Sequence record: LC727699.1
Reading direction: 5' to 3' (one strand)
Length of the DNA stretch: 64,000 nt
Shown: piece by piece, positions 6,296 through 61,871 of the stretch
Position numbering within the stretch: the first letter of the stretch is position 1
Layout of the letters: every line of letters starts with the position of its first letter
Translations under genes and position numbers: made by a program
The notes under the pieces: generated by a model
Databases searched by the model: none
What the model was told of the DNA's origin: nothing
The model's input: the letters and a program-made list of their open reading frames with translations, nothing else

Positions 6296-7228
6296 GTGAT
6301 GAGAATTATTGATTATGTACGTGAACTCGCACCAGTTACTGAACGTCGTGAACTATTAAATCAAATCCGTTCATTACGTGAAGAATATGATGCAACTCTC
6401 GCACCAATTATTGACGATGTAGGTGAAGTATTTGGTAATATGCAACTTAAATCAGATTTAGGTATGCGGTTATCTACTGAACTACGGCGAGCGATTAGTT
6501 TTAATACTGAACCGATTAAACTAGTACTGGATACTCTTTCAAATATTCGTGGTAGTTTTGATATGATCGAAAGCGAAATCCGGCGTTTATTTGCTATTCA
6601 GTTTACTAACTCTAATCTAACCTTTGACCGTGCAAACATGTTACGTTTTGTTGATGGTCTTAGTTTCTATATTCGTTATGGCCGTAAACTACTACTAAAT
6701 CTAATTGCACAAGAAGCAATGAAATTAGGTAAGGCTACTGAATTAAAATCATCTCGTGCTGAGAAAGAATGGCTATACACTAATATGGCGCAATTCATTA
6801 CTCTGTATCCAGCAATGAGTCTTAAGACTAATGAACTGAAACAACGCTTAAGCCGTGCATCTAGTGCTGAAGTCAATGAAGGTACTTATGATGTAGCTGT
6901 GAGTGCTCTCTCTATAGCTCAACGTGATCCACTTAACATGGATGGCTTCTCACCTCGTCAGAACCCGTTCGTGCTATTTGGCAAGTTCTTAGCTGAGTAT
7001 CAGGTTGAACGTTTTAAAGAAGCTGAGCAAGAATTCCTTGCACTTCAGCTACGTTTACAAGAAATGCGGGAAATGCAAAGTAATGGTAAAGTGGATGCAC
7101 GCCTACAGAAGCTTATTAAAGAGTATGAAATTCGTATCTCTGATTATAACTATCGCCTAGGTATGATCCAAGATCGCGCATCTGAGTTCTTTGCTAACCA
7201 TCGTGATCTACTATCTCTTGGTCACTAA
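6296..7228 (+). CDS. Inner-head structural protein (gp90-like)
   Basis: 310 aa helical ORF with SD (AAGGA), in operon with the previous gene. Confidence 0.7.
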   Translation: MMRIIDYVRELAPVTERRELLNQIRSLREEYDATLAPIIDDVGEVFGNMQLKSDLGMRLSTELRRAISFNTEPIKLVLDTLSNIRGSFDMIESEIRRLFAIQFTNSNLTFDRANMLRFVDGLSFYIRYGRKLLLNLIAQEAMKLGKATELKSSRAEKEWLYTNMAQFITLYPAMSLKTNELKQRLSRASSAEVNEGTYDVAVSALSIAQRDPLNMDGFSPRQNPFVLFGKFLAEYQVERFKEAEQEFLALQLRLQEMREMQSNGKVDARLQKLIKEYEIRISDYNYRLGMIQDRASEFFANHRDLLSLGH

Positions 7229-7773
7229 TGGAGGGCATTGATATGCCAGCAACTAATGCTGTACGCCCATTTGGTCGTAATTACTCAGGTGGTCAACAAC
7301 AGGCCATTTCACGGTTCACTGCTCGTCCCGGTGATCCTCAAGTTGAAGAACTATATCTTATCTTTACCAACTTTCCTGCACAAACTGCATATTGGGAATT
7401 CCATAAGAAAGTTCTAGCTTGTGCTATTCGTCTTTTTAGCGGAAACTATAATTGGTTTATTCTACAGGACAATAATAGTAATATTGATAGTTATAATTAT
7501 CAATTCCTATTAGATACTGTTCGATACATTGCTACGGGTCATCGACGTATTTCAATTACCCAATGGCCAATGTTACTAGCTACTGAACCAGATGCTGGTG
7601 CACAACTCATTGAACCGCGCGCTGAAATTGCTACTCTCTTTAATGAGTTAAAATTAGATCTAGATACTGTTTCAATGATCCAGAATTGGGTTAAACACAA
7701 AAACGGTATGAATGATCTAATGTATACCCTACATCTACTATTTGGATCTGTAGAAGTAATAGATAAGGACTGA
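7228..7773 (+). CDS. Minor head structural protein (gp91-like)
   Basis: 181 aa, TAATG stop/start overlap. Confidence 0.6.
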   Translation: MEGIDMPATNAVRPFGRNYSGGQQQAISRFTARPGDPQVEELYLIFTNFPAQTAYWEFHKKVLACAIRLFSGNYNWFILQDNNSNIDSYNYQFLLDTVRYIATGHRRISITQWPMLLATEPDAGAQLIEPRAEIATLFNELKLDLDTVSMIQNWVKHKNGMNDLMYTLHLLFGSVEVIDKD

Positions 7774-33919: not shown

Positions 33920-36163
33920 ATGAGCGTACATGCCCTAAGAGAACTGTTTAAACACAAAGGCGAAAAGAATTACGAAGTCTTCTCAATGGAAGATTTCATT
34001 GGCCGCCTAGAAAGTGAAATTGGTCTAAATGACAGCGTTGTTAGTCAAGGTCGTTCCCTTATTAGCAGCATTTCACATGAAAACTTCGGTACCGTGCAAG
34101 CTACCGACATTCAAGATGCCGCTGCAATTTATAACAAAATGCAAATGCTCGTTAACGACTATGGTTTCGAACGAGTAAGTTCCAGTGATCCTCAAGTACG
34201 TGCTCGTGAAGAACGTGTCCGTGAGAACCAAATCACTGCTGCTACCATGGCTGCTATCGCCTGTGCTGATGAAACTAAATATATCCGTGCACTACGTGGT
34301 ATTACCAAAGCTAAAGCTTCTAATGAAGATCATGTTAAGGTTGTACAGCATCAGTTCAATGGCCCTGCTGGCGGCATTCAAGTATTCGAAAATGGTGTTG
34401 GCCTAGAGAACTATAACGAGAAGTCACAGCGTGATTTCCGTGTTGTAACTATTGGTTATAACCTAGCTGCTAGCCGTCAGGATGAATTCGCTGAGCGTAT
34501 CTATCCGACCACCGTTATCAACCCGATTGAAGGTGGTGTTGTTCAGGTTCTTCCTTACATCGCTGTAATGAAAGACGTTTACCACGAAGTATCCGGCGTT
34601 AAGATGGATAACGAAGAAGTGAACATGGTAGAAGCCTATCGTGATCCTTCCATCCTCGACGACGAAAGCATTGCACTAATTCCTGCCCTAGATCCGGCTG
34701 GTTCCAATGCTGACTTCTTCGTAGACCCGGCTCTTGTTCCTCCGTACACCATCAAGAACGAGCAGAACCTAACTATCACTACTGCTCCGCTAAAAGCGAA
34801 CGTACGTCTTGATCTAATGGGTAACTCCAATGCTAACCTACTCATTCAGCGTGGCATGCTTGAAGTTTCTGACACCATTGATCCGGCTGGACGTCTAAAG
34901 AACCTATTCGTTCTACTCGGCGGTAAAGTTGTTAAGTTCAAGGTTGACCGTCTACCTCGCGCTGTGTTCCAGCCCGATCTAGTTGGTGATACCCGGAACG
35001 CAGTTATCCGTTTCGATAGCGATGACCTTGTTGTTAGTGGCGATACCACTTTCATCGACGGTTCAGCTGATGGCGTTATTAACGACCTTAAGACTGCTAA
35101 ACTAAGCCTACGTCTAAGCGTTGGTTTTGGTGGTACTATCAGCCTATCCAAAGGCGATTCTAAGTTTGGTGCTACCGACACTTACGTCGATAAAGTTCTA
35201 AACGAAGATGGCCAGGTAATGGATAATGCTGACCCGGCTGTTAAAGCTATTCTAGATCAGCTAACTGACCTAGCTGTTATCGGTTTCGAACTAGATACTC
35301 GCTTCACCAACACTAACCGTCGTCAGCGTGGTCACCTACTACAGACCCGTGCACTACAGTTCCGTCATCCGATCCCGATGCACGCTCCTGTAACTCTACC
35401 GATGGACACCATGACCGATGAAGGTCCGGGTGAGGTTGTTAAAGCTCTAACTGTTAACACCAACATCCGTAACAGCAACAACGCTGTTAAGCGCATGCTT
35501 AACTACCTTGCTCAACTACGTGAAGTTGTACACAATGGTTACAACCGTCCGAAGTTTGGTATCATCGAAGGTGCACTATCCGCTGTAATGCGTCCGACCT
35601 ATCGTTACAAAGAACTAGATCTTGAGAAAGTCATCGACACCATCAAGTCTAAAGATCGTTGGGACGACGTTTGCGCTGCGATCCTAAACTGTGTTAAAGC
35701 TGAGCTATTCCCGGCTCACCGTGATTCCAACATTGAAGCTGCCTTCCGTGTTATCTCCGGTAACCAGGATGAAACTCCGATGTATCTCTTCTGCTCCGAC
35801 AAAGAGATTGCTAACTATCTAATGACTAAAGGTGACGACCGTACTCTAGGTGCTTATCTCAAGTACGATATCGTTTCCACCAACAACCAGCTATTTGATG
35901 GTAAGCTAGTTGTAATTCCGACCCGCGCAGTACAACAAGAAAACGACATCCTCTCCTGGGGCCAGTTCTTCTACGTATCTACTGTTATCGCTGACCTACC
36001 GATCACTCGTGGTGGTCACCAGGTTACTCGCGAAATCGCGGCCATTCCGTTCAACCTACACGTCAACAACATTCCGTTCGCGCTAGAGTTCAAGATCACT
36101 GGCTTCCAGAAAGTCATGGGCGAAACTCAGTTCAACGGTAAGCTTGCTGATCTTAAGCCGTGA
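33920..36163 (+). CDS. gp120: Major capsid protein precursor (phiKZ gp120)
   Basis: 747 aa, strongest codon bias in the window, propeptide with SME/SHE/GLE sites; ends in TGA. Confidence 0.92.
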   Translation: MSVHALRELFKHKGEKNYEVFSMEDFIGRLESEIGLNDSVVSQGRSLISSISHENFGTVQATDIQDAAAIYNKMQMLVNDYGFERVSSSDPQVRAREERVRENQITAATMAAIACADETKYIRALRGITKAKASNEDHVKVVQHQFNGPAGGIQVFENGVGLENYNEKSQRDFRVVTIGYNLAASRQDEFAERIYPTTVINPIEGGVVQVLPYIAVMKDVYHEVSGVKMDNEEVNMVEAYRDPSILDDESIALIPALDPAGSNADFFVDPALVPPYTIKNEQNLTITTAPLKANVRLDLMGNSNANLLIQRGMLEVSDTIDPAGRLKNLFVLLGGKVVKFKVDRLPRAVFQPDLVGDTRNAVIRFDSDDLVVSGDTTFIDGSADGVINDLKTAKLSLRLSVGFGGTISLSKGDSKFGATDTYVDKVLNEDGQVMDNADPAVKAILDQLTDLAVIGFELDTRFTNTNRRQRGHLLQTRALQFRHPIPMHAPVTLPMDTMTDEGPGEVVKALTVNTNIRNSNNAVKRMLNYLAQLREVVHNGYNRPKFGIIEGALSAVMRPTYRYKELDLEKVIDTIKSKDRWDDVCAAILNCVKAELFPAHRDSNIEAAFRVISGNQDETPMYLFCSDKEIANYLMTKGDDRTLGAYLKYDIVSTNNQLFDGKLVVIPTRAVQQENDILSWGQFFYVSTVIADLPITRGGHQVTREIAAIPFNLHVNNIPFALEFKITGFQKVMGETQFNGKLADLKP

Positions 36164-36244
36164 GCTGGAAAGGGTTACCGTTATCTAGAAAATGGGACTA
36201 TCCGTTATTTGGAAGACGGTAATGCCCGGAAGTTAGAAGAGTAA
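36161..36244 (+). other. In-frame C-terminal read-through extension of the major capsid protein: [TGA]AGKGYRYLENGTIRYLEDGNARKLEE[TAA]
   Basis: 26 sense codons in the MCP frame; peptide repeats match the C-terminus of the gene at 61338-61871; terminator follows the TAA, not the TGA. Confidence 0.7.
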
Positions 36245-36248
36245 CAGA

Positions 36249-36279
36249 CATAGGCCCTCCCTTCGGGGAGGGCTTTATG
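36249..36279 (+). terminator. Capsid-operon terminator, CATA-hairpin-TTATG type
   Basis: GCCCTCCC TTCG GGGAGGGC TTTATG; CATA begins 4 nt after the TAA of the read-through extension. Confidence 0.85.
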
Positions 36280-36300
36280 TTGTATTACATTAAAAAAAGT

Positions 36301-36316
36301 TTAAGATCTATATTAC
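36301..36316 (+). promoter_or_regulatory. phiKZ early promoter motif TTAAGATCTATATTAC
   Basis: TATATTAC consensus after the capsid terminator, ahead of the operon containing the nvRNAP subunit. Confidence 0.7.
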
Positions 36317-36359
36317 AGTAATGATCATGATCTTCTAATTTAAAAATAGGTTAATCCAA

Positions 36360-36812
36360 ATGAACGTTCAATTATTTCCAGAAGTCATCGAAAGATGGCA
36401 AGATGCCCTAAGGGTATCTCTTATAGAAAAAAATACCATGGTAGATAATAAGATGTCTACCGTAGATGATGATAAATACATTAATACTTTCTTTGAAGAA
36501 TTCCATCCTGTTCAGGATGCCTTTATGCCCAAAGGGCTAGAGGACTTTATTACTGATTATGCCAAGAAAAACATTGAGGAGATCCTTCAAGAAAAACAGT
36601 TTAAGCGGGCCACCGAAAAGTTATATTGTTCGAGTGACCCGCATAAATGGCAGAAATCAAGTAATAAGGAAAAGAGTGAATCCTTTAAGGGAAGGTCCGT
36701 ACATCAAACTAAAAAGAGGCTCCCCAACATTGTAGATTTGGAGGCCGTTGTGATTAAGGTAGATTTCAATGGTAACACTAAAAATTGCGGGGCTTACTCA
36801 AGTATCAGTTAA
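36360..36812 (+). CDS. Hypothetical protein (gp121-like)
   Basis: 150 aa, downstream of a TATATTAC motif. Confidence 0.6.
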   Translation: MNVQLFPEVIERWQDALRVSLIEKNTMVDNKMSTVDDDKYINTFFEEFHPVQDAFMPKGLEDFITDYAKKNIEEILQEKQFKRATEKLYCSSDPHKWQKSSNKEKSESFKGRSVHQTKKRLPNIVDLEAVVIKVDFNGNTKNCGAYSSIS

Positions 36813-37851
36813 GCCTACTATCGATCACCCGTATGATAAGAAATCGGGAACTGCATACACTAAGGGTGATCCATACGCTAATTGGAATCTCCCTGTCTCA
36901 CGTTTTGTTGAGTATCGGAATGAATCATTTCATCGTATTACTGTAGTCGATTCATCTGGTCACGCTATCAATATTGGGACATCCCGTAAGTATGTAATGT
37001 CTAATAGACTAGTAGTTAAGGTCATTTACCGATGGAGTGGTGATGATAGTTTTAACTATGAAGTTATGGCTAAATCTATTCCAGGTTTTACACCTGAGGA
37101 AATGTTAGAATATATTCAGTCATTTAGTCGACAGACATTCGATCAGTTTAATAACCAGCTATCTGAGATTACTATTTGGTATTCAATTGACTTATCAAAA
37201 CTAGTAGATCAGTATCATGGTGGTTGGATTCAGAGTTTAGGTATCCAAGTATTTAAAACTGAGTATAGTCAGTATTTTGAATTTTATCCAAATAGAAATA
37301 TTAGTCCTCCTGGTTACAGCGGACTTAGTCCAGAAGAAGAAGCACTTTCTAATCAAGTATGGAATGAAACATATTCTTTAACGTATAATACTGACATCAA
37401 TAAACCAGATAAATTGTTTTATGTAATGGCTGGCAGAATTATGGCCATTGAGTCAATCTACAATCCATCATTAGATCCTGGTCTTATTGTTAATATCCGT
37501 GGTAAGCATGGATGTATTAGTCATAATGGCGAAAAGAGATATGTAATACCTCCTGAACAGTTCCATGAAAATGGTTTCTTTAGAACACATGAAGAAGCTG
37601 CTGCAATGGTTGGAATTAAAGATAAGAAAGTTATTGAACGTCTTAAGACTGCACTCTTAACAGCGGCTGATATTAAGGAAAGGGAAGCCCAGGAAAAAGC
37701 AGCTGGTACGTTTGATAAAGAATTCAAACCAAAAGATGTTGTATTGATTCATGGTCTAAAATGGGGTGATCTAAACTCCATTGCCTCTGATCTAGTATCA
37801 TCCATTAAAATTGTAGGTTCACTGATGGATTTAATTTTGCCAAAAGTTTAG
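36769..37851 (+). CDS. Conserved hypothetical protein (gp122-like)
   Basis: 360 aa ORF overlapping the previous gene. Confidence 0.65.
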   Translation: MVTLKIAGLTQVSVKPTIDHPYDKKSGTAYTKGDPYANWNLPVSRFVEYRNESFHRITVVDSSGHAINIGTSRKYVMSNRLVVKVIYRWSGDDSFNYEVMAKSIPGFTPEEMLEYIQSFSRQTFDQFNNQLSEITIWYSIDLSKLVDQYHGGWIQSLGIQVFKTEYSQYFEFYPNRNISPPGYSGLSPEEEALSNQVWNETYSLTYNTDINKPDKLFYVMAGRIMAIESIYNPSLDPGLIVNIRGKHGCISHNGEKRYVIPPEQFHENGFFRTHEEAAAMVGIKDKKVIERLKTALLTAADIKEREAQEKAAGTFDKEFKPKDVVLIHGLKWGDLNSIASDLVSSIKIVGSLMDLILPKV

Positions 37852-61337: not shown

Positions 61338-61871
61338 ATGCATGATATCTTTCCGTATGACATGGTGTCGAGGGATGCGCTAGTAAAACTTGCGCGGGAT
61401 GATTTAAAAATAAACTTCAAACCAGAAACAGTTACATTTGAAGATATGTTTTTTAGTCCAACCACGATTGAGCCTGGACGTACATTTATTGAAATGATCG
61501 ACATTACTACTGACATTAAGTACATGTTAACTTACCGTCGGTTAGATTTTGCTGATCCACGAGCTATTGGTGAAGGATCTATCCTTAAGATAGTTGGTAC
61601 TTTAACACCTAAAGCAATTGCTGAAGAAATCAACCGTTCACGAGGCTGGAAGCTTGGACCAGATGATGTTTCATTTGATACAACACCAATCAATGCAACT
61701 ACGGATGTTGTTCCATACACGATAGTAGCTATGTCGAGTAGTTATGCTTACTATGGTGAATGTAATATACTGATTCAACGTATTGATGATACATCAGATA
61801 CTATCCGGCTATTAGAGAATGGTGCAGCACGTTATTTAGAAAATGGCCAAATCCGTTATCTAGAAAGTTAA
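61338..61871 (+). CDS. Virion structural protein with C-terminal RYLENG repeats (gp143-like)
   Basis: 177 aa; paralog of 42470/42922; ends IRLLENGAARYLENGQIRYLES. Confidence 0.7.
   Translation: MHDIFPYDMVSRDALVKLARDDLKINFKPETVTFEDMFFSPTTIEPGRTFIEMIDITTDIKYMLTYRRLDFADPRAIGEGSILKIVGTLTPKAIAEEINRSRGWKLGPDDVSFDTTPINATTDVVPYTIVAMSSSYAYYGECNILIQRIDDTSDTIRLLENGAARYLENGQIRYLES

What the first reader, a model, noticed from the sequence alone, without database searches (positions are those of the whole stretch)
36161..36244. Leaky UGA at the end of the major capsid gene: hidden in-frame extension with RYLENG repeats
Seen in the sequence: (1) The MCP ends CCG-TGA, whereas most genes here end in TAA. 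The same frame continues for 26 sense codons, AGKGYRYLENGTIRYLEDGNARKLEE, to TAA at 36242-36244. (2) The peptide is three imperfect repeats of R-x-L-E-[ND]-G. (3) The same repeats form the C-terminus of the annotated virion gene at 61338-61871 (IRLLENGAARYLENGQIRYLES). Over the aligned 12 codons RYLENGxIRYLE, the substitutions are synonymous (CTA/TTA, GGG/GGC, TTG/CTA) apart from T/Q. (4) Terminators of this family usually start 4-13 nt after a stop; this one starts 4 nt after the extension TAA and 85 nt after the TGA. (5) There is no in-frame start or SD for a separate mini-gene. Established: UGA is the leakiest bacterial stop, and minor extended coat proteins exist (Qbeta A1 by UGA read-through, T7 gp10B by frameshift). 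Inference: a minority of capsid subunits carry a C-terminal RYLENG tag, perhaps a docking site for fibres or decoration proteins. I do not recall this being described for phiKZ gp120, but I cannot search the literature.
Basis: partly seen in the sequence, partly recalled or inferred. Interest (0 to 1): 0.92.

Follow-up and report, generated by a model that had tools for sequence, protein, structure and literature searches.

The report
Conserved leaky-stop extension of phiKZ capsid protein
The major capsid gene of the jumbo phage phiKZ and its relatives in at least seven genera ends in a UGA stop followed by a short, evolutionarily conserved in-frame coding stretch, so a small share of capsid subunits very probably carry a hidden 26-residue tail that nobody has annotated.

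Summary

- **Window:** it is a Phikzvirus. The MCP gene (gp120, 33920-36163) ends in TGA, followed by 26 in-frame sense codons (36164-36241), TAA, then a terminator.
- **Relatives with the extension:** 27 distinct relatives have it, including PS119XW, PhiPA3, Phabio, 201phi2-1, Psa21, Noxifer and metagenomic phages with MCP identity down to about 58%. In all of them the MCP stop is TGA and is followed in frame by 24-30 codons with the same three-fold 8-residue repeat (Arg, Glu, Gly).
- **Coding signature:**
  - Indels are multiples of three.
  - The invariant Arg and Gly columns use several synonymous codons.
  - Independent sister pairs show excess synonymous change (pN/pS 0.46, p 8e-8).
  - There is no conserved start codon.
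- **Relatives without the extension:** 18 of 19 distinct relatives that have no long in-frame stretch after the MCP stop use TAA. Two of these are independent losses inside the tagged clade.
- **No fusion:** none of 269 MCP clusters has the tag joined through a sense codon.
- **Second copy of the tag:** the same tag ends the gp143 family, which regulates the holin.

Best explanation: low-level UGA read-through makes a minor extended MCP. No protein-level data exist yet, and I found no published description. The function of the tag is unknown.

The parts
33920..36163 (+). Major capsid protein gene (gp120, 747 aa), including its TGA stop
   Evidence: ORF list. 100% DNA identity to phiKZ PHIKZ120. 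Homologs carry Pfam PhiKZ_MCP.
36161..36163 (+). UGA stop proposed to be read through at low frequency
   Evidence: TGA in all 27 distinct relatives that carry the extension. The following base is A in 17, G in 9, C in 1 and T in none. Relatives without the extension use TAA in 18 of 19.
36164..36241 (+). In-frame extension of 26 sense codons: three 8-residue periods (36179-36196, 36203-36220, 36227-36241)
   Evidence: Translation. Conservation of frame and motif, and synonymous codon variation at invariant Arg/Glu/Gly columns. pN/pS 0.46 in 11 independent pairs. Unannotated in nearly all phage records.
36242..36244 (+). TAA that ends the extension
   Evidence: In relatives the second stop is TAA, TGA or TAG. 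In 8 Phikzvirus records the last sense codon is itself a stop, one residue earlier.
36172..36227 (+). Predicted RNA hairpin inside the extension, starting 8 nt after the UGA (possible read-through stimulator, or a by-product of the repeat)
   Evidence: MFE -28.6 kcal/mol, z -3.5. Three nested helices are 73% paired across 19 relatives, against 40-53% in slid controls. Folding is not stronger than in synonymous recodings (mean z -0.18). C-ending codons before Arg and GAC-GG are enriched relative to gp143 tags.
36252..36275 (+). Intrinsic terminator-like hairpin of the MCP transcript, followed by the conserved T-rich motif
   Evidence: Scan. Compensatory changes in 7 stem pairs across relatives. 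It matches the terminator motif class reported for 201phi2-1 and phiKZ (PMC11512511).
61338..61871 (+). gp143 gene (177 aa; holin regulator / virion-associated protein). Its C-terminus (61806-61868) carries the same three-period tag.
   Evidence: phrog_2935. The tag is present in 113 of 120 homolog clusters. Function from PMC12894885. AF2 model pLDDT 89.5 overall; tail pLDDT 69-80 with beta bridges at a period of 8.

Best explanation
The extension is a real coding sequence that can only be reached by ribosomes translating the capsid gene.

Proposed mechanism:
- Most ribosomes terminate at the UGA and make the normal 747-residue MCP.
- A small fraction decode the UGA with a near-cognate tRNA. 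In other bacteria this is usually tRNA-Trp. They continue for 26 codons to the TAA.
- The product is an MCP about 3 kDa longer, ending in a three-period Arg/Glu/Gly tag.

Where the tag would sit: the MCP C-terminal arms meet at the centre of each capsomer, so the tag would emerge there, probably on the outside. A capsid has about 1620 MCP chains, so even 0.1-3% read-through would give a few to a few dozen tagged subunits per head.

The stop is kept, and kept as the leakiest stop, because a minority product is what is selected.

Shown: conservation of frame, motif and stop type, and absence of a start codon.
Inferred: the read-through mechanism, the inserted residue, the stoichiometry, the outward display and any function of the tag.
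For: 1. **Breadth.** 27 distinct extension sequences were found, from isolates of seven named genera plus unclassified isolates and metagenomic contigs. All have TGA followed by 24-30 in-frame codons with the same periodic motif.

2. **Protein-level selection.**
 - The first Arg column is 19/19 and uses four codons.
 - Two Gly columns are 19/19; one uses all four Gly codons and the other three.
 - The second Arg column is 18/19 and uses both CGN and AGR codons.
 - All indels are whole codons.
 - The other five frames mostly carry stops.
 - Eleven phylogenetically independent sister pairs give pS 0.374 and pN 0.170. 85 of 199 changes are synonymous against about 25% expected (p 8e-8).

3. **No independent initiation.** 10 of 19 sequences have no in-frame ATG/GTG/TTG, and none is conserved.

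4. **Stop type tracks the extension.** The split is 27 TGA with the tag against 18 TAA without it (Fisher p 2e-10, uncorrected for phylogeny). L066 and L068 are independent losses nested in the tagged clade, and both have TAA.

5. **No fusion.** No MCP cluster has the tag joined by a sense codon: 0/120 clusters at 90% identity and 0/149 representatives at 50%.

6. **A real peptide module.** The same motif is the C-terminus of the annotated gp143 family. Its 201phi2-1 homolog is annotated as detected in virions by mass spectrometry.

7. **Structural context.** The MCP C-terminal arm (728-747) forms a central six-helix bundle in hexamers and contacts the outer protein gp244 in pentamers. The model has 1620 MCP chains (PMC11297242).

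8. **The mRNA includes the extension.** The only terminator lies after it.
Against: - **No protein-level evidence.** The two extension tryptic peptides occur in no paper of the library. The two phiKZ cryo-EM papers do not mention an extension.
- **No recognised read-through context.** No phage suppressor tRNA was looked for outside the window, and the window has no tRNA.
- **Possible nucleotide-level constraint.** The extension also folds into a hairpin. Some positions are conserved at the nucleotide level while the amino acid varies: the third base before Arg is C in 53 of 77 cases. Part of the conservation could therefore be RNA-level.
- **TGA is not exclusive to the tag.** One relative without the extension also ends in TGA (L096, followed by T).
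- **Moderate selection.** A dN/dS of about 0.45 is only moderate purifying selection.
Confidence: 0.78

Rival explanations
1. The stretch is an untranslated 3' RNA element of the MCP mRNA, such as a hairpin for stability, processing or regulation. The open frame is a side effect.
For: - The hairpin folds with z -3.5 in phiKZ and z -3.9 in L022.
- The nested helices are kept in relatives.
- Some positions are conserved as nucleotides while the amino acid varies, and C is enriched before Arg codons relative to gp143 tags.
Against: An RNA element does not explain:
- 27 of 27 open frames,
- indels only in whole codons,
- synonymous variation at invariant Arg/Gly columns,
- the excess of synonymous change,
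- identity of the peptide motif with the C-terminus of a real protein,
- the link between extension and TGA.

In addition, folding energy is no better than in synonymous recodings of the same peptide.
Confidence: 0.08
2. The extension is a separate mini-gene, translated by its own initiation or by termination-reinitiation, giving a free peptide of about 26 residues.
For: A purine-rich SD-like run follows the TGA in many relatives. Automatic annotation placed small ORFs over this region in two records.
Against: There is no conserved in-frame start codon, and 10 of 19 sequences have none at all. The two annotated small ORFs are in another frame, and that frame carries stops in most relatives.
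Confidence: 0.04
3. The UGA is decoded as selenocysteine, directed by the downstream hairpin acting as a bacterial SECIS.
For: A hairpin lies shortly after the UGA. From my own knowledge, not tested here, Pseudomonas hosts have selenocysteine machinery.
Against: Only short helix segments tied to conserved codons are kept. The apical part is variable. There is no RNA family match. Sec insertion is normally efficient and would not explain why the stop tracks a minority product.
Confidence: 0.03
4. The extension is a decaying relic of a formerly longer capsid gene and has no present function.
For: Non-motif positions evolve fast. The extension is about 55% identical between phiKZ and L087, while the last 300 MCP residues are 90% identical.
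Against: A relic would have accumulated stops and frameshifts over a divergence at which synonymous sites are near saturation (pooled pS about 0.6). Where the extension was lost, it was removed cleanly and the stop became TAA.
Confidence: 0.03

Closest known systems
Qbeta A1 (read-through) protein of Leviviricetes RNA phages
   Same: A coat gene ends in a leaky UGA. An in-frame extension without its own start gives a minor, C-terminally extended coat protein built into the capsid in a few copies. This comparison rests on my own knowledge, not on a tool result.
   Different: - Qbeta is an unrelated virus (ssRNA, T=3) with an unrelated coat fold.
- The A1 extension is about 200 residues, against 26 here.
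- Here the host is Pseudomonas and the phage is a 280-kb dsDNA jumbo phage with an HK97-fold MCP.
- No protein evidence exists yet for phiKZ.
Capsid-protein extensions made by programmed frameshifting in tailed phages (T7 10B, T3, Lactobacillus A2, Listeria A118/A500/PSA)
   Same: Two products come from one major capsid gene of a tailed dsDNA phage, with the minor one carrying a C-terminal add-on displayed on the head (review PMC5009743).
   Different: Those use -1 or +1 frameshifting into another frame at a shift site. Here the extension is in the zero frame behind a stop, so read-through is needed, not frameshifting. The add-on is a short repeat tag, not an Ig-like domain or a long tail.
Read-through stimulated by a 3' stem-loop about 8 nt after the stop (described for several eukaryotic RNA viruses; Firth et al. 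2011, listed in the reference list seen)
   Same: A long imperfect hairpin is predicted to start 8 nt after the UGA.
   Different: That class is eukaryotic, and no bacterial example is known to me. Here the hairpin is not more stable than the peptide and codon usage alone would give, so a stimulatory role is unproven.
C-terminal tag of the phiKZ gp143 family (holin regulator; homologs annotated as virion structural proteins)
   Same: It has the same three-period Arg/Glu/Gly motif at the extreme C-terminus. In a joint alignment of 22 tags, two Arg and two Gly columns are invariant and two Glu columns nearly so.
   Different: - It is part of an ordinary ORF with no recoding.
- It is also present in phages whose MCP lacks the extension (L053 with L031; L062 with L027).
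- There is no co-evolution with the MCP tag of the same genome.

Membership tests
Programmed stop-codon read-through giving a minor extended coat protein (Qbeta A1 type, by mechanism) | The coat gene ends in a leaky stop (UGA), and this is conserved | tested here: met
   TGA in 27 of 27 tagged relatives. TAA in 18 of 19 untagged relatives.
Programmed stop-codon read-through giving a minor extended coat protein (Qbeta A1 type, by mechanism) | A downstream ORF in the same frame, without its own start, under protein-level selection | tested here: met
   no conserved start, whole-codon indels, synonymous variation at invariant columns, pN/pS 0.46 (p 8e-8).
Programmed stop-codon read-through giving a minor extended coat protein (Qbeta A1 type, by mechanism) | The extended protein is present in particles at minor stoichiometry | not testable with these tools
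   No raw proteomics are available. Literature searches found no report.
Programmed stop-codon read-through giving a minor extended coat protein (Qbeta A1 type, by mechanism) | Sequence or fold homology to Qbeta coat/A1 | tested here: not met
   The MCP belongs to Pfam PhiKZ_MCP (HK97-type). The extension has no Pfam or PDB match. The relation is analogy only.
Programmed ribosomal frameshift extension of a capsid protein (T7 10B type) | The extension is encoded in the -1 or +1 frame and reached at a shift site | tested here: not met
   The extension is in frame 0. The +1 and +2 frames carry stops.
Selenocysteine recoding (bacterial SECIS) | A conserved hairpin with a conserved apical loop at a fixed distance after the UGA | tested here: inconclusive
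   A hairpin is present, but only codon-linked helix segments are conserved and the apical part varies. No Rfam match.
Stop-codon reassignment (TGA as sense, e.g. code 4) | In-frame TGA within genes; TGA not used as a stop | tested here: not met
   TGA ends 8 of 56 long ORFs in the window. The long ORFs, including the 747-codon MCP, contain no internal TGA.
Ig-like domain added to a phage structural protein by recoding | The appended module is an Ig-like domain | tested here: not met
   The phiKZ extension is 26 residues with no domain match. Only L020/L092 has a Big_2 ORF in frame after the TGA. That ORF has its own ATG and is called as a separate gene.

The most novel reading that the evidence does not exclude
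The Arg/Glu/Gly tag is an address label shared by a few capsid subunits and by the holin regulator gp143. Both would bind the same, still unknown partner, or the tag would bring gp143 to heads. Accumulation of assembled capsids could then feed into lysis timing. This would be a capsid-counting link between morphogenesis and the holin clock, set by the read-through frequency.
Probability: 0.1. Interest if true: 0.92.

Novelty: new variant of a known kind. Interest (0 to 1): 0.8.

Why it matters
phiKZ is the model nucleus-forming jumbo phage. Its capsid has been solved at near-atomic resolution and its virion proteome published, yet this product is neither annotated nor mentioned in what I could search.

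If confirmed, it would matter in several ways:
- It would be the first conserved programmed stop-codon read-through in a capsid gene of a tailed dsDNA phage. The only known parallels are Qbeta A1 (an RNA phage) and the frameshift-made extensions of T7-like and Listeria phages.
- It shows that low-occupancy features are invisible to icosahedral averaging and to searches restricted to annotated proteins.
- It gives a defined, surface-placed minority tag on a 1620-subunit shell.
- It ties that tag by sequence to the lysis regulator gp143, which opens a testable question about its partner.

The claim can be checked quickly with existing mass-spectrometry and cryo-EM data.

Tried and rejected
**Dead ends and negative results**
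- **Co-evolution of the two tags.** In 13 genomes, cognate MCP/gp143 tag pairs are no more alike than non-cognate pairs (10.54 against 10.59 identities of 16; p 0.68). Specific tag-tag pairing and gene conversion are therefore unsupported.
- **Co-occurrence.** gp143 keeps its tag in phages whose MCP has no extension. The two are not mutually dependent.
- **RNA structure beyond coding.** The synonymous-recoding control gave mean z -0.18. MFE alone gives no evidence for a selected structure. Only position-specific codon choices hint at one.
- **Database matches.** Rfam found nothing above threshold. The window has no tRNA. The tag has no Pfam or PDB match.
- **Tag in other protein families.** A search with the last 40 residues of a gp143 homolog returned only the query itself. 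tblastn of the extension hit only phiKZ-like Pseudomonas phages.
- **Sense-codon fusions.** None in 120 plus 149 MCP clusters.
- **Small ORFs annotated over the region.** Those in HPP-Temi and Viktualia are in another frame and are not conserved.
- **Goslar.** Its MCP also ends in TGA with 28 open codons but no motif, and the database holds no close relative to test it against.
- **Literature.** Eight searches found no description of MCP read-through.

Full report
**What is in the window.** The window is a Phikzvirus.
- Region 35700-36420 is 100% identical to phiKZ AF399011/NC_004629.
- The gp143 ORF is 98.3% identical to the reference and 100% identical to phage 'sp. LC'.
- The MCP ORF is 33920-36163 (747 aa) and ends CCG-TGA.
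- The same frame continues for 26 sense codons (36164-36241) to TAA at 36242-36244.
- A terminator-like hairpin follows at 36252-36275.
- The extension has three periods of eight residues, each starting with Arg and carrying Glu at position 4. The first two have Gly at position 6.
- The ORF at 61338-61871 (gp143) ends with the same three periods.
- A six-frame pattern search finds the motif only at these two places in 64 kb.

In one genome this is not significant. 21% of long ORFs in the window have at least 26 open codons after their stop, and base composition alone gives P about 0.15.

**Comparison with relatives.** I collected the MCP 3' end and the sequence downstream from three kinds of source:
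- annotated phage records,
- IMG/VR and metagenome contigs found with an MCP alignment,
- contigs encoding MCP homologs from the protein collection.

Reading the MCP frame past its stop gives 27 distinct sequences with a TGA stop followed in frame by 24-30 codons carrying the same periodic motif. They include:
- phiKZ, PS119XW (Pawinskivirus), PhiPA3 (Miltoncavirus), Phabio, 201phi2-1 (Serwervirus), Psa21 (Tepukevirus) and Noxifer,
- the isolates RVTF4, D6 and Viktualia,
- many uncultured relatives with MCP identity down to about 58%.

The base after the TGA is A in 17, G in 9, C in 1 and never T.

**Is it coding?** In the 19-sequence alignment:
- The first Arg column is 19/19 and uses four codons.
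- The first Glu column is 19/19.
- Two Gly columns are 19/19; one uses all four Gly codons and the other three.
- The second Arg column is 18/19 and uses both CGN and AGR codons.
- All indels are whole codons, including in a plain nucleotide alignment.
- The other five frames mostly carry stops.
- Ten of the 19 sequences have no in-frame ATG/GTG/TTG, and none is conserved.
- Pooled pN/pS is 0.64 in frame 0, against 0.82 and 1.01 in the shifted frames.

Eleven phylogenetically independent sister pairs give pS 0.374 and pN 0.170. 85 of 199 changes are synonymous where about a quarter is expected (p 8e-8). Selection is moderate overall and strong on the motif columns. phiKZ and its nearest distinct relative L087 are 90% identical over the last 300 MCP residues but only about 55% identical in the extension, with the motif and frame kept.

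**Stop type follows the extension.** Eighteen distinct relatives without the extension end in TAA, with the terminator close behind. On an MCP tree:
- L066 and L068 are independent losses nested inside the tagged clade, and both have TAA.
- In the sister clade, L022 keeps TGA plus the tag while its relatives have TAA and no tag.
- Uncorrected for phylogeny, the association gives p 2e-10.

Exceptions and special cases:
- L096 has TGA followed by T and only five codons.
- Goslar has TGA and 28 open codons without the motif.
- L020/L092 has TGA followed in frame by a 203-codon ORF with a Big_2 domain. That ORF has its own ATG two codons after the stop and is called as a separate gene.

No MCP has the tag fused through a sense codon: 0 of 120 clusters at 90% identity and 0 of 149 representatives at 50%.

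**Mechanism.** The simplest reading is low-level read-through of the UGA by a near-cognate tRNA. This is established for UGA in other bacteria and for Qbeta A1 (my own knowledge).

I found no recognised read-through context. The extension RNA is predicted to form a long imperfect hairpin:
- It starts 8 nt after the UGA (36172-36227; z -3.5).
- Its three nested helices pair the codons before and at each Arg with the Asp-Gly or Lys/Pro-Gly codons.
- They are 73% paired across relatives, against 40-53% in slid controls.
- Native sequences fold no better than synonymous recodings of the same peptide (mean z -0.18). The structure may therefore be a by-product of the repeat.

Against a pure by-product:
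- The third base of the codon before Arg is C in 53 of 77 cases, while the amino acid there varies widely. In gp143 tags encoding the same motif it is C in 30 of 66.
- GAC-GG is preferred over GAT-GG 27:12, against 9:12 in gp143 tags.

I treat the hairpin as a candidate stimulator, not a finding. Other points:
- Selenocysteine is unlikely. The apical part is not conserved and there is no RNA family hit.
- The window has no tRNA.
- Phage tRNAs elsewhere in the genome were not examined.

**Where the tag would sit.** The published capsid structure (PMC11297242) models 1620 MCP chains.
- The C-terminal arm (728-747) forms a central six-helix bundle with a pore of about 9 A in hexamers.
- In pentamers it moves outward to bind the outer protein gp244.

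An extra 27 residues would therefore emerge at the capsomer centre, probably outside (inference). Six such tails per hexamer may not fit. That would explain why the stop is never lost (inference).

Neither that paper nor the 2026 structural atlas mentions read-through. Low occupancy would be averaged out by icosahedral reconstruction. Searches against annotated proteins would miss the peptides.

**The second copy of the tag.** gp143 is reported as a cytoplasmic regulator of the holin gp142. It acts through its N-terminal domain and is non-essential by TnSeq (PMC12894885 and bioRxiv 10.1101/2025.11.23.690004).
- Its 201phi2-1 homolog gp228 is annotated as detected in virions by mass spectrometry.
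- The tag is present in 113 of 120 homolog clusters.
- It is also present in phages whose MCP lacks the extension.
- An AlphaFold2 model (pLDDT 89.5) gives a confident globular body. The tail has pLDDT 69-80 with beta bridges every eight residues, which suggests a small beta meander.
- The body resembles the baseplate protein PHIKZ127.
- The two tags of one genome do not co-evolve.
- The tag has no Pfam or PDB match.

Its function is unknown. A shared partner is the most economical guess.

**Literature.** Eight full-text searches and the targeted reading of seven papers found no description of this extension.

**Verdict.** The read-through interpretation is strongly supported by comparative evidence but is unproven at the protein level. 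It is a new variant of a known kind of recoding.

Noticed in passing
L020:3996-4607 and L092:3466-4080: In one uncultured lineage the MCP ends in a Thr-rich linker and TGA. It is followed in frame, with no spacer, by a 203-codon ORF with a Big_2 Ig-like domain (E 4e-9). That ORF has an ATG two codons after the stop and is called as a separate gene. It could be a second, different read-through add-on or simply an adjacent decoration gene.
   Followed up: partly
L084:1086-1175 (Escherichia phage Goslar): The Goslar MCP also ends in TGA-A, followed by 28 open in-frame codons without the Arg/Glu/Gly motif, ending just before the terminator. The phage collection holds no close relative to test conservation.
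   Followed up: partly
window 36274-36285, and the same place in all relatives (alignment A3, columns 208-220): A strongly conserved T-rich motif containing TATG directly follows the terminator stem in nearly all relatives. It appears to be the shared phiKZ/201phi2-1 terminator motif reported from ONT-cappable-seq (PMC11512511).
   Followed up: partly
window 36307-36316: The sequence TCTATATTAC upstream of the next gene (36360-36812) is conserved in several relatives. From my own knowledge, it resembles the phiKZ early promoter consensus.
   Followed up: no
window 61338-61871: The globular body of gp143 is a remote structural and sequence relative of the baseplate protein PHIKZ127 (PDB 9xqd chain 0, Foldseek E 1e-6). 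It also resembles a phage 'Triplex 2' baseplate protein (9gb2). This is an odd ancestry for a cytoplasmic holin regulator.
   Followed up: partly
window 36239-36241: In eight Phikzvirus records (for example NK1) the last sense codon of the extension is a stop, which shortens the tag by one residue. Otherwise the extension is invariant within the genus.
   Followed up: yes
window 7228-7773 and 36769-37851: Two other ORFs are followed in the same frame by long open stretches: TGA then 443 codons, and TAG then 546 codons. Most likely the next gene simply lies in the same frame. Conservation was not examined.
   Followed up: no
P0241-P0267 and P0196-P0240 (MCP homologs): Many more distant MCP homologs end in long Gly/Thr/Ser/Asp-rich low-complexity tails, often ending in Pro. 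In those phages the MCP C-terminus thus carries a different, directly encoded appendage.
   Followed up: no
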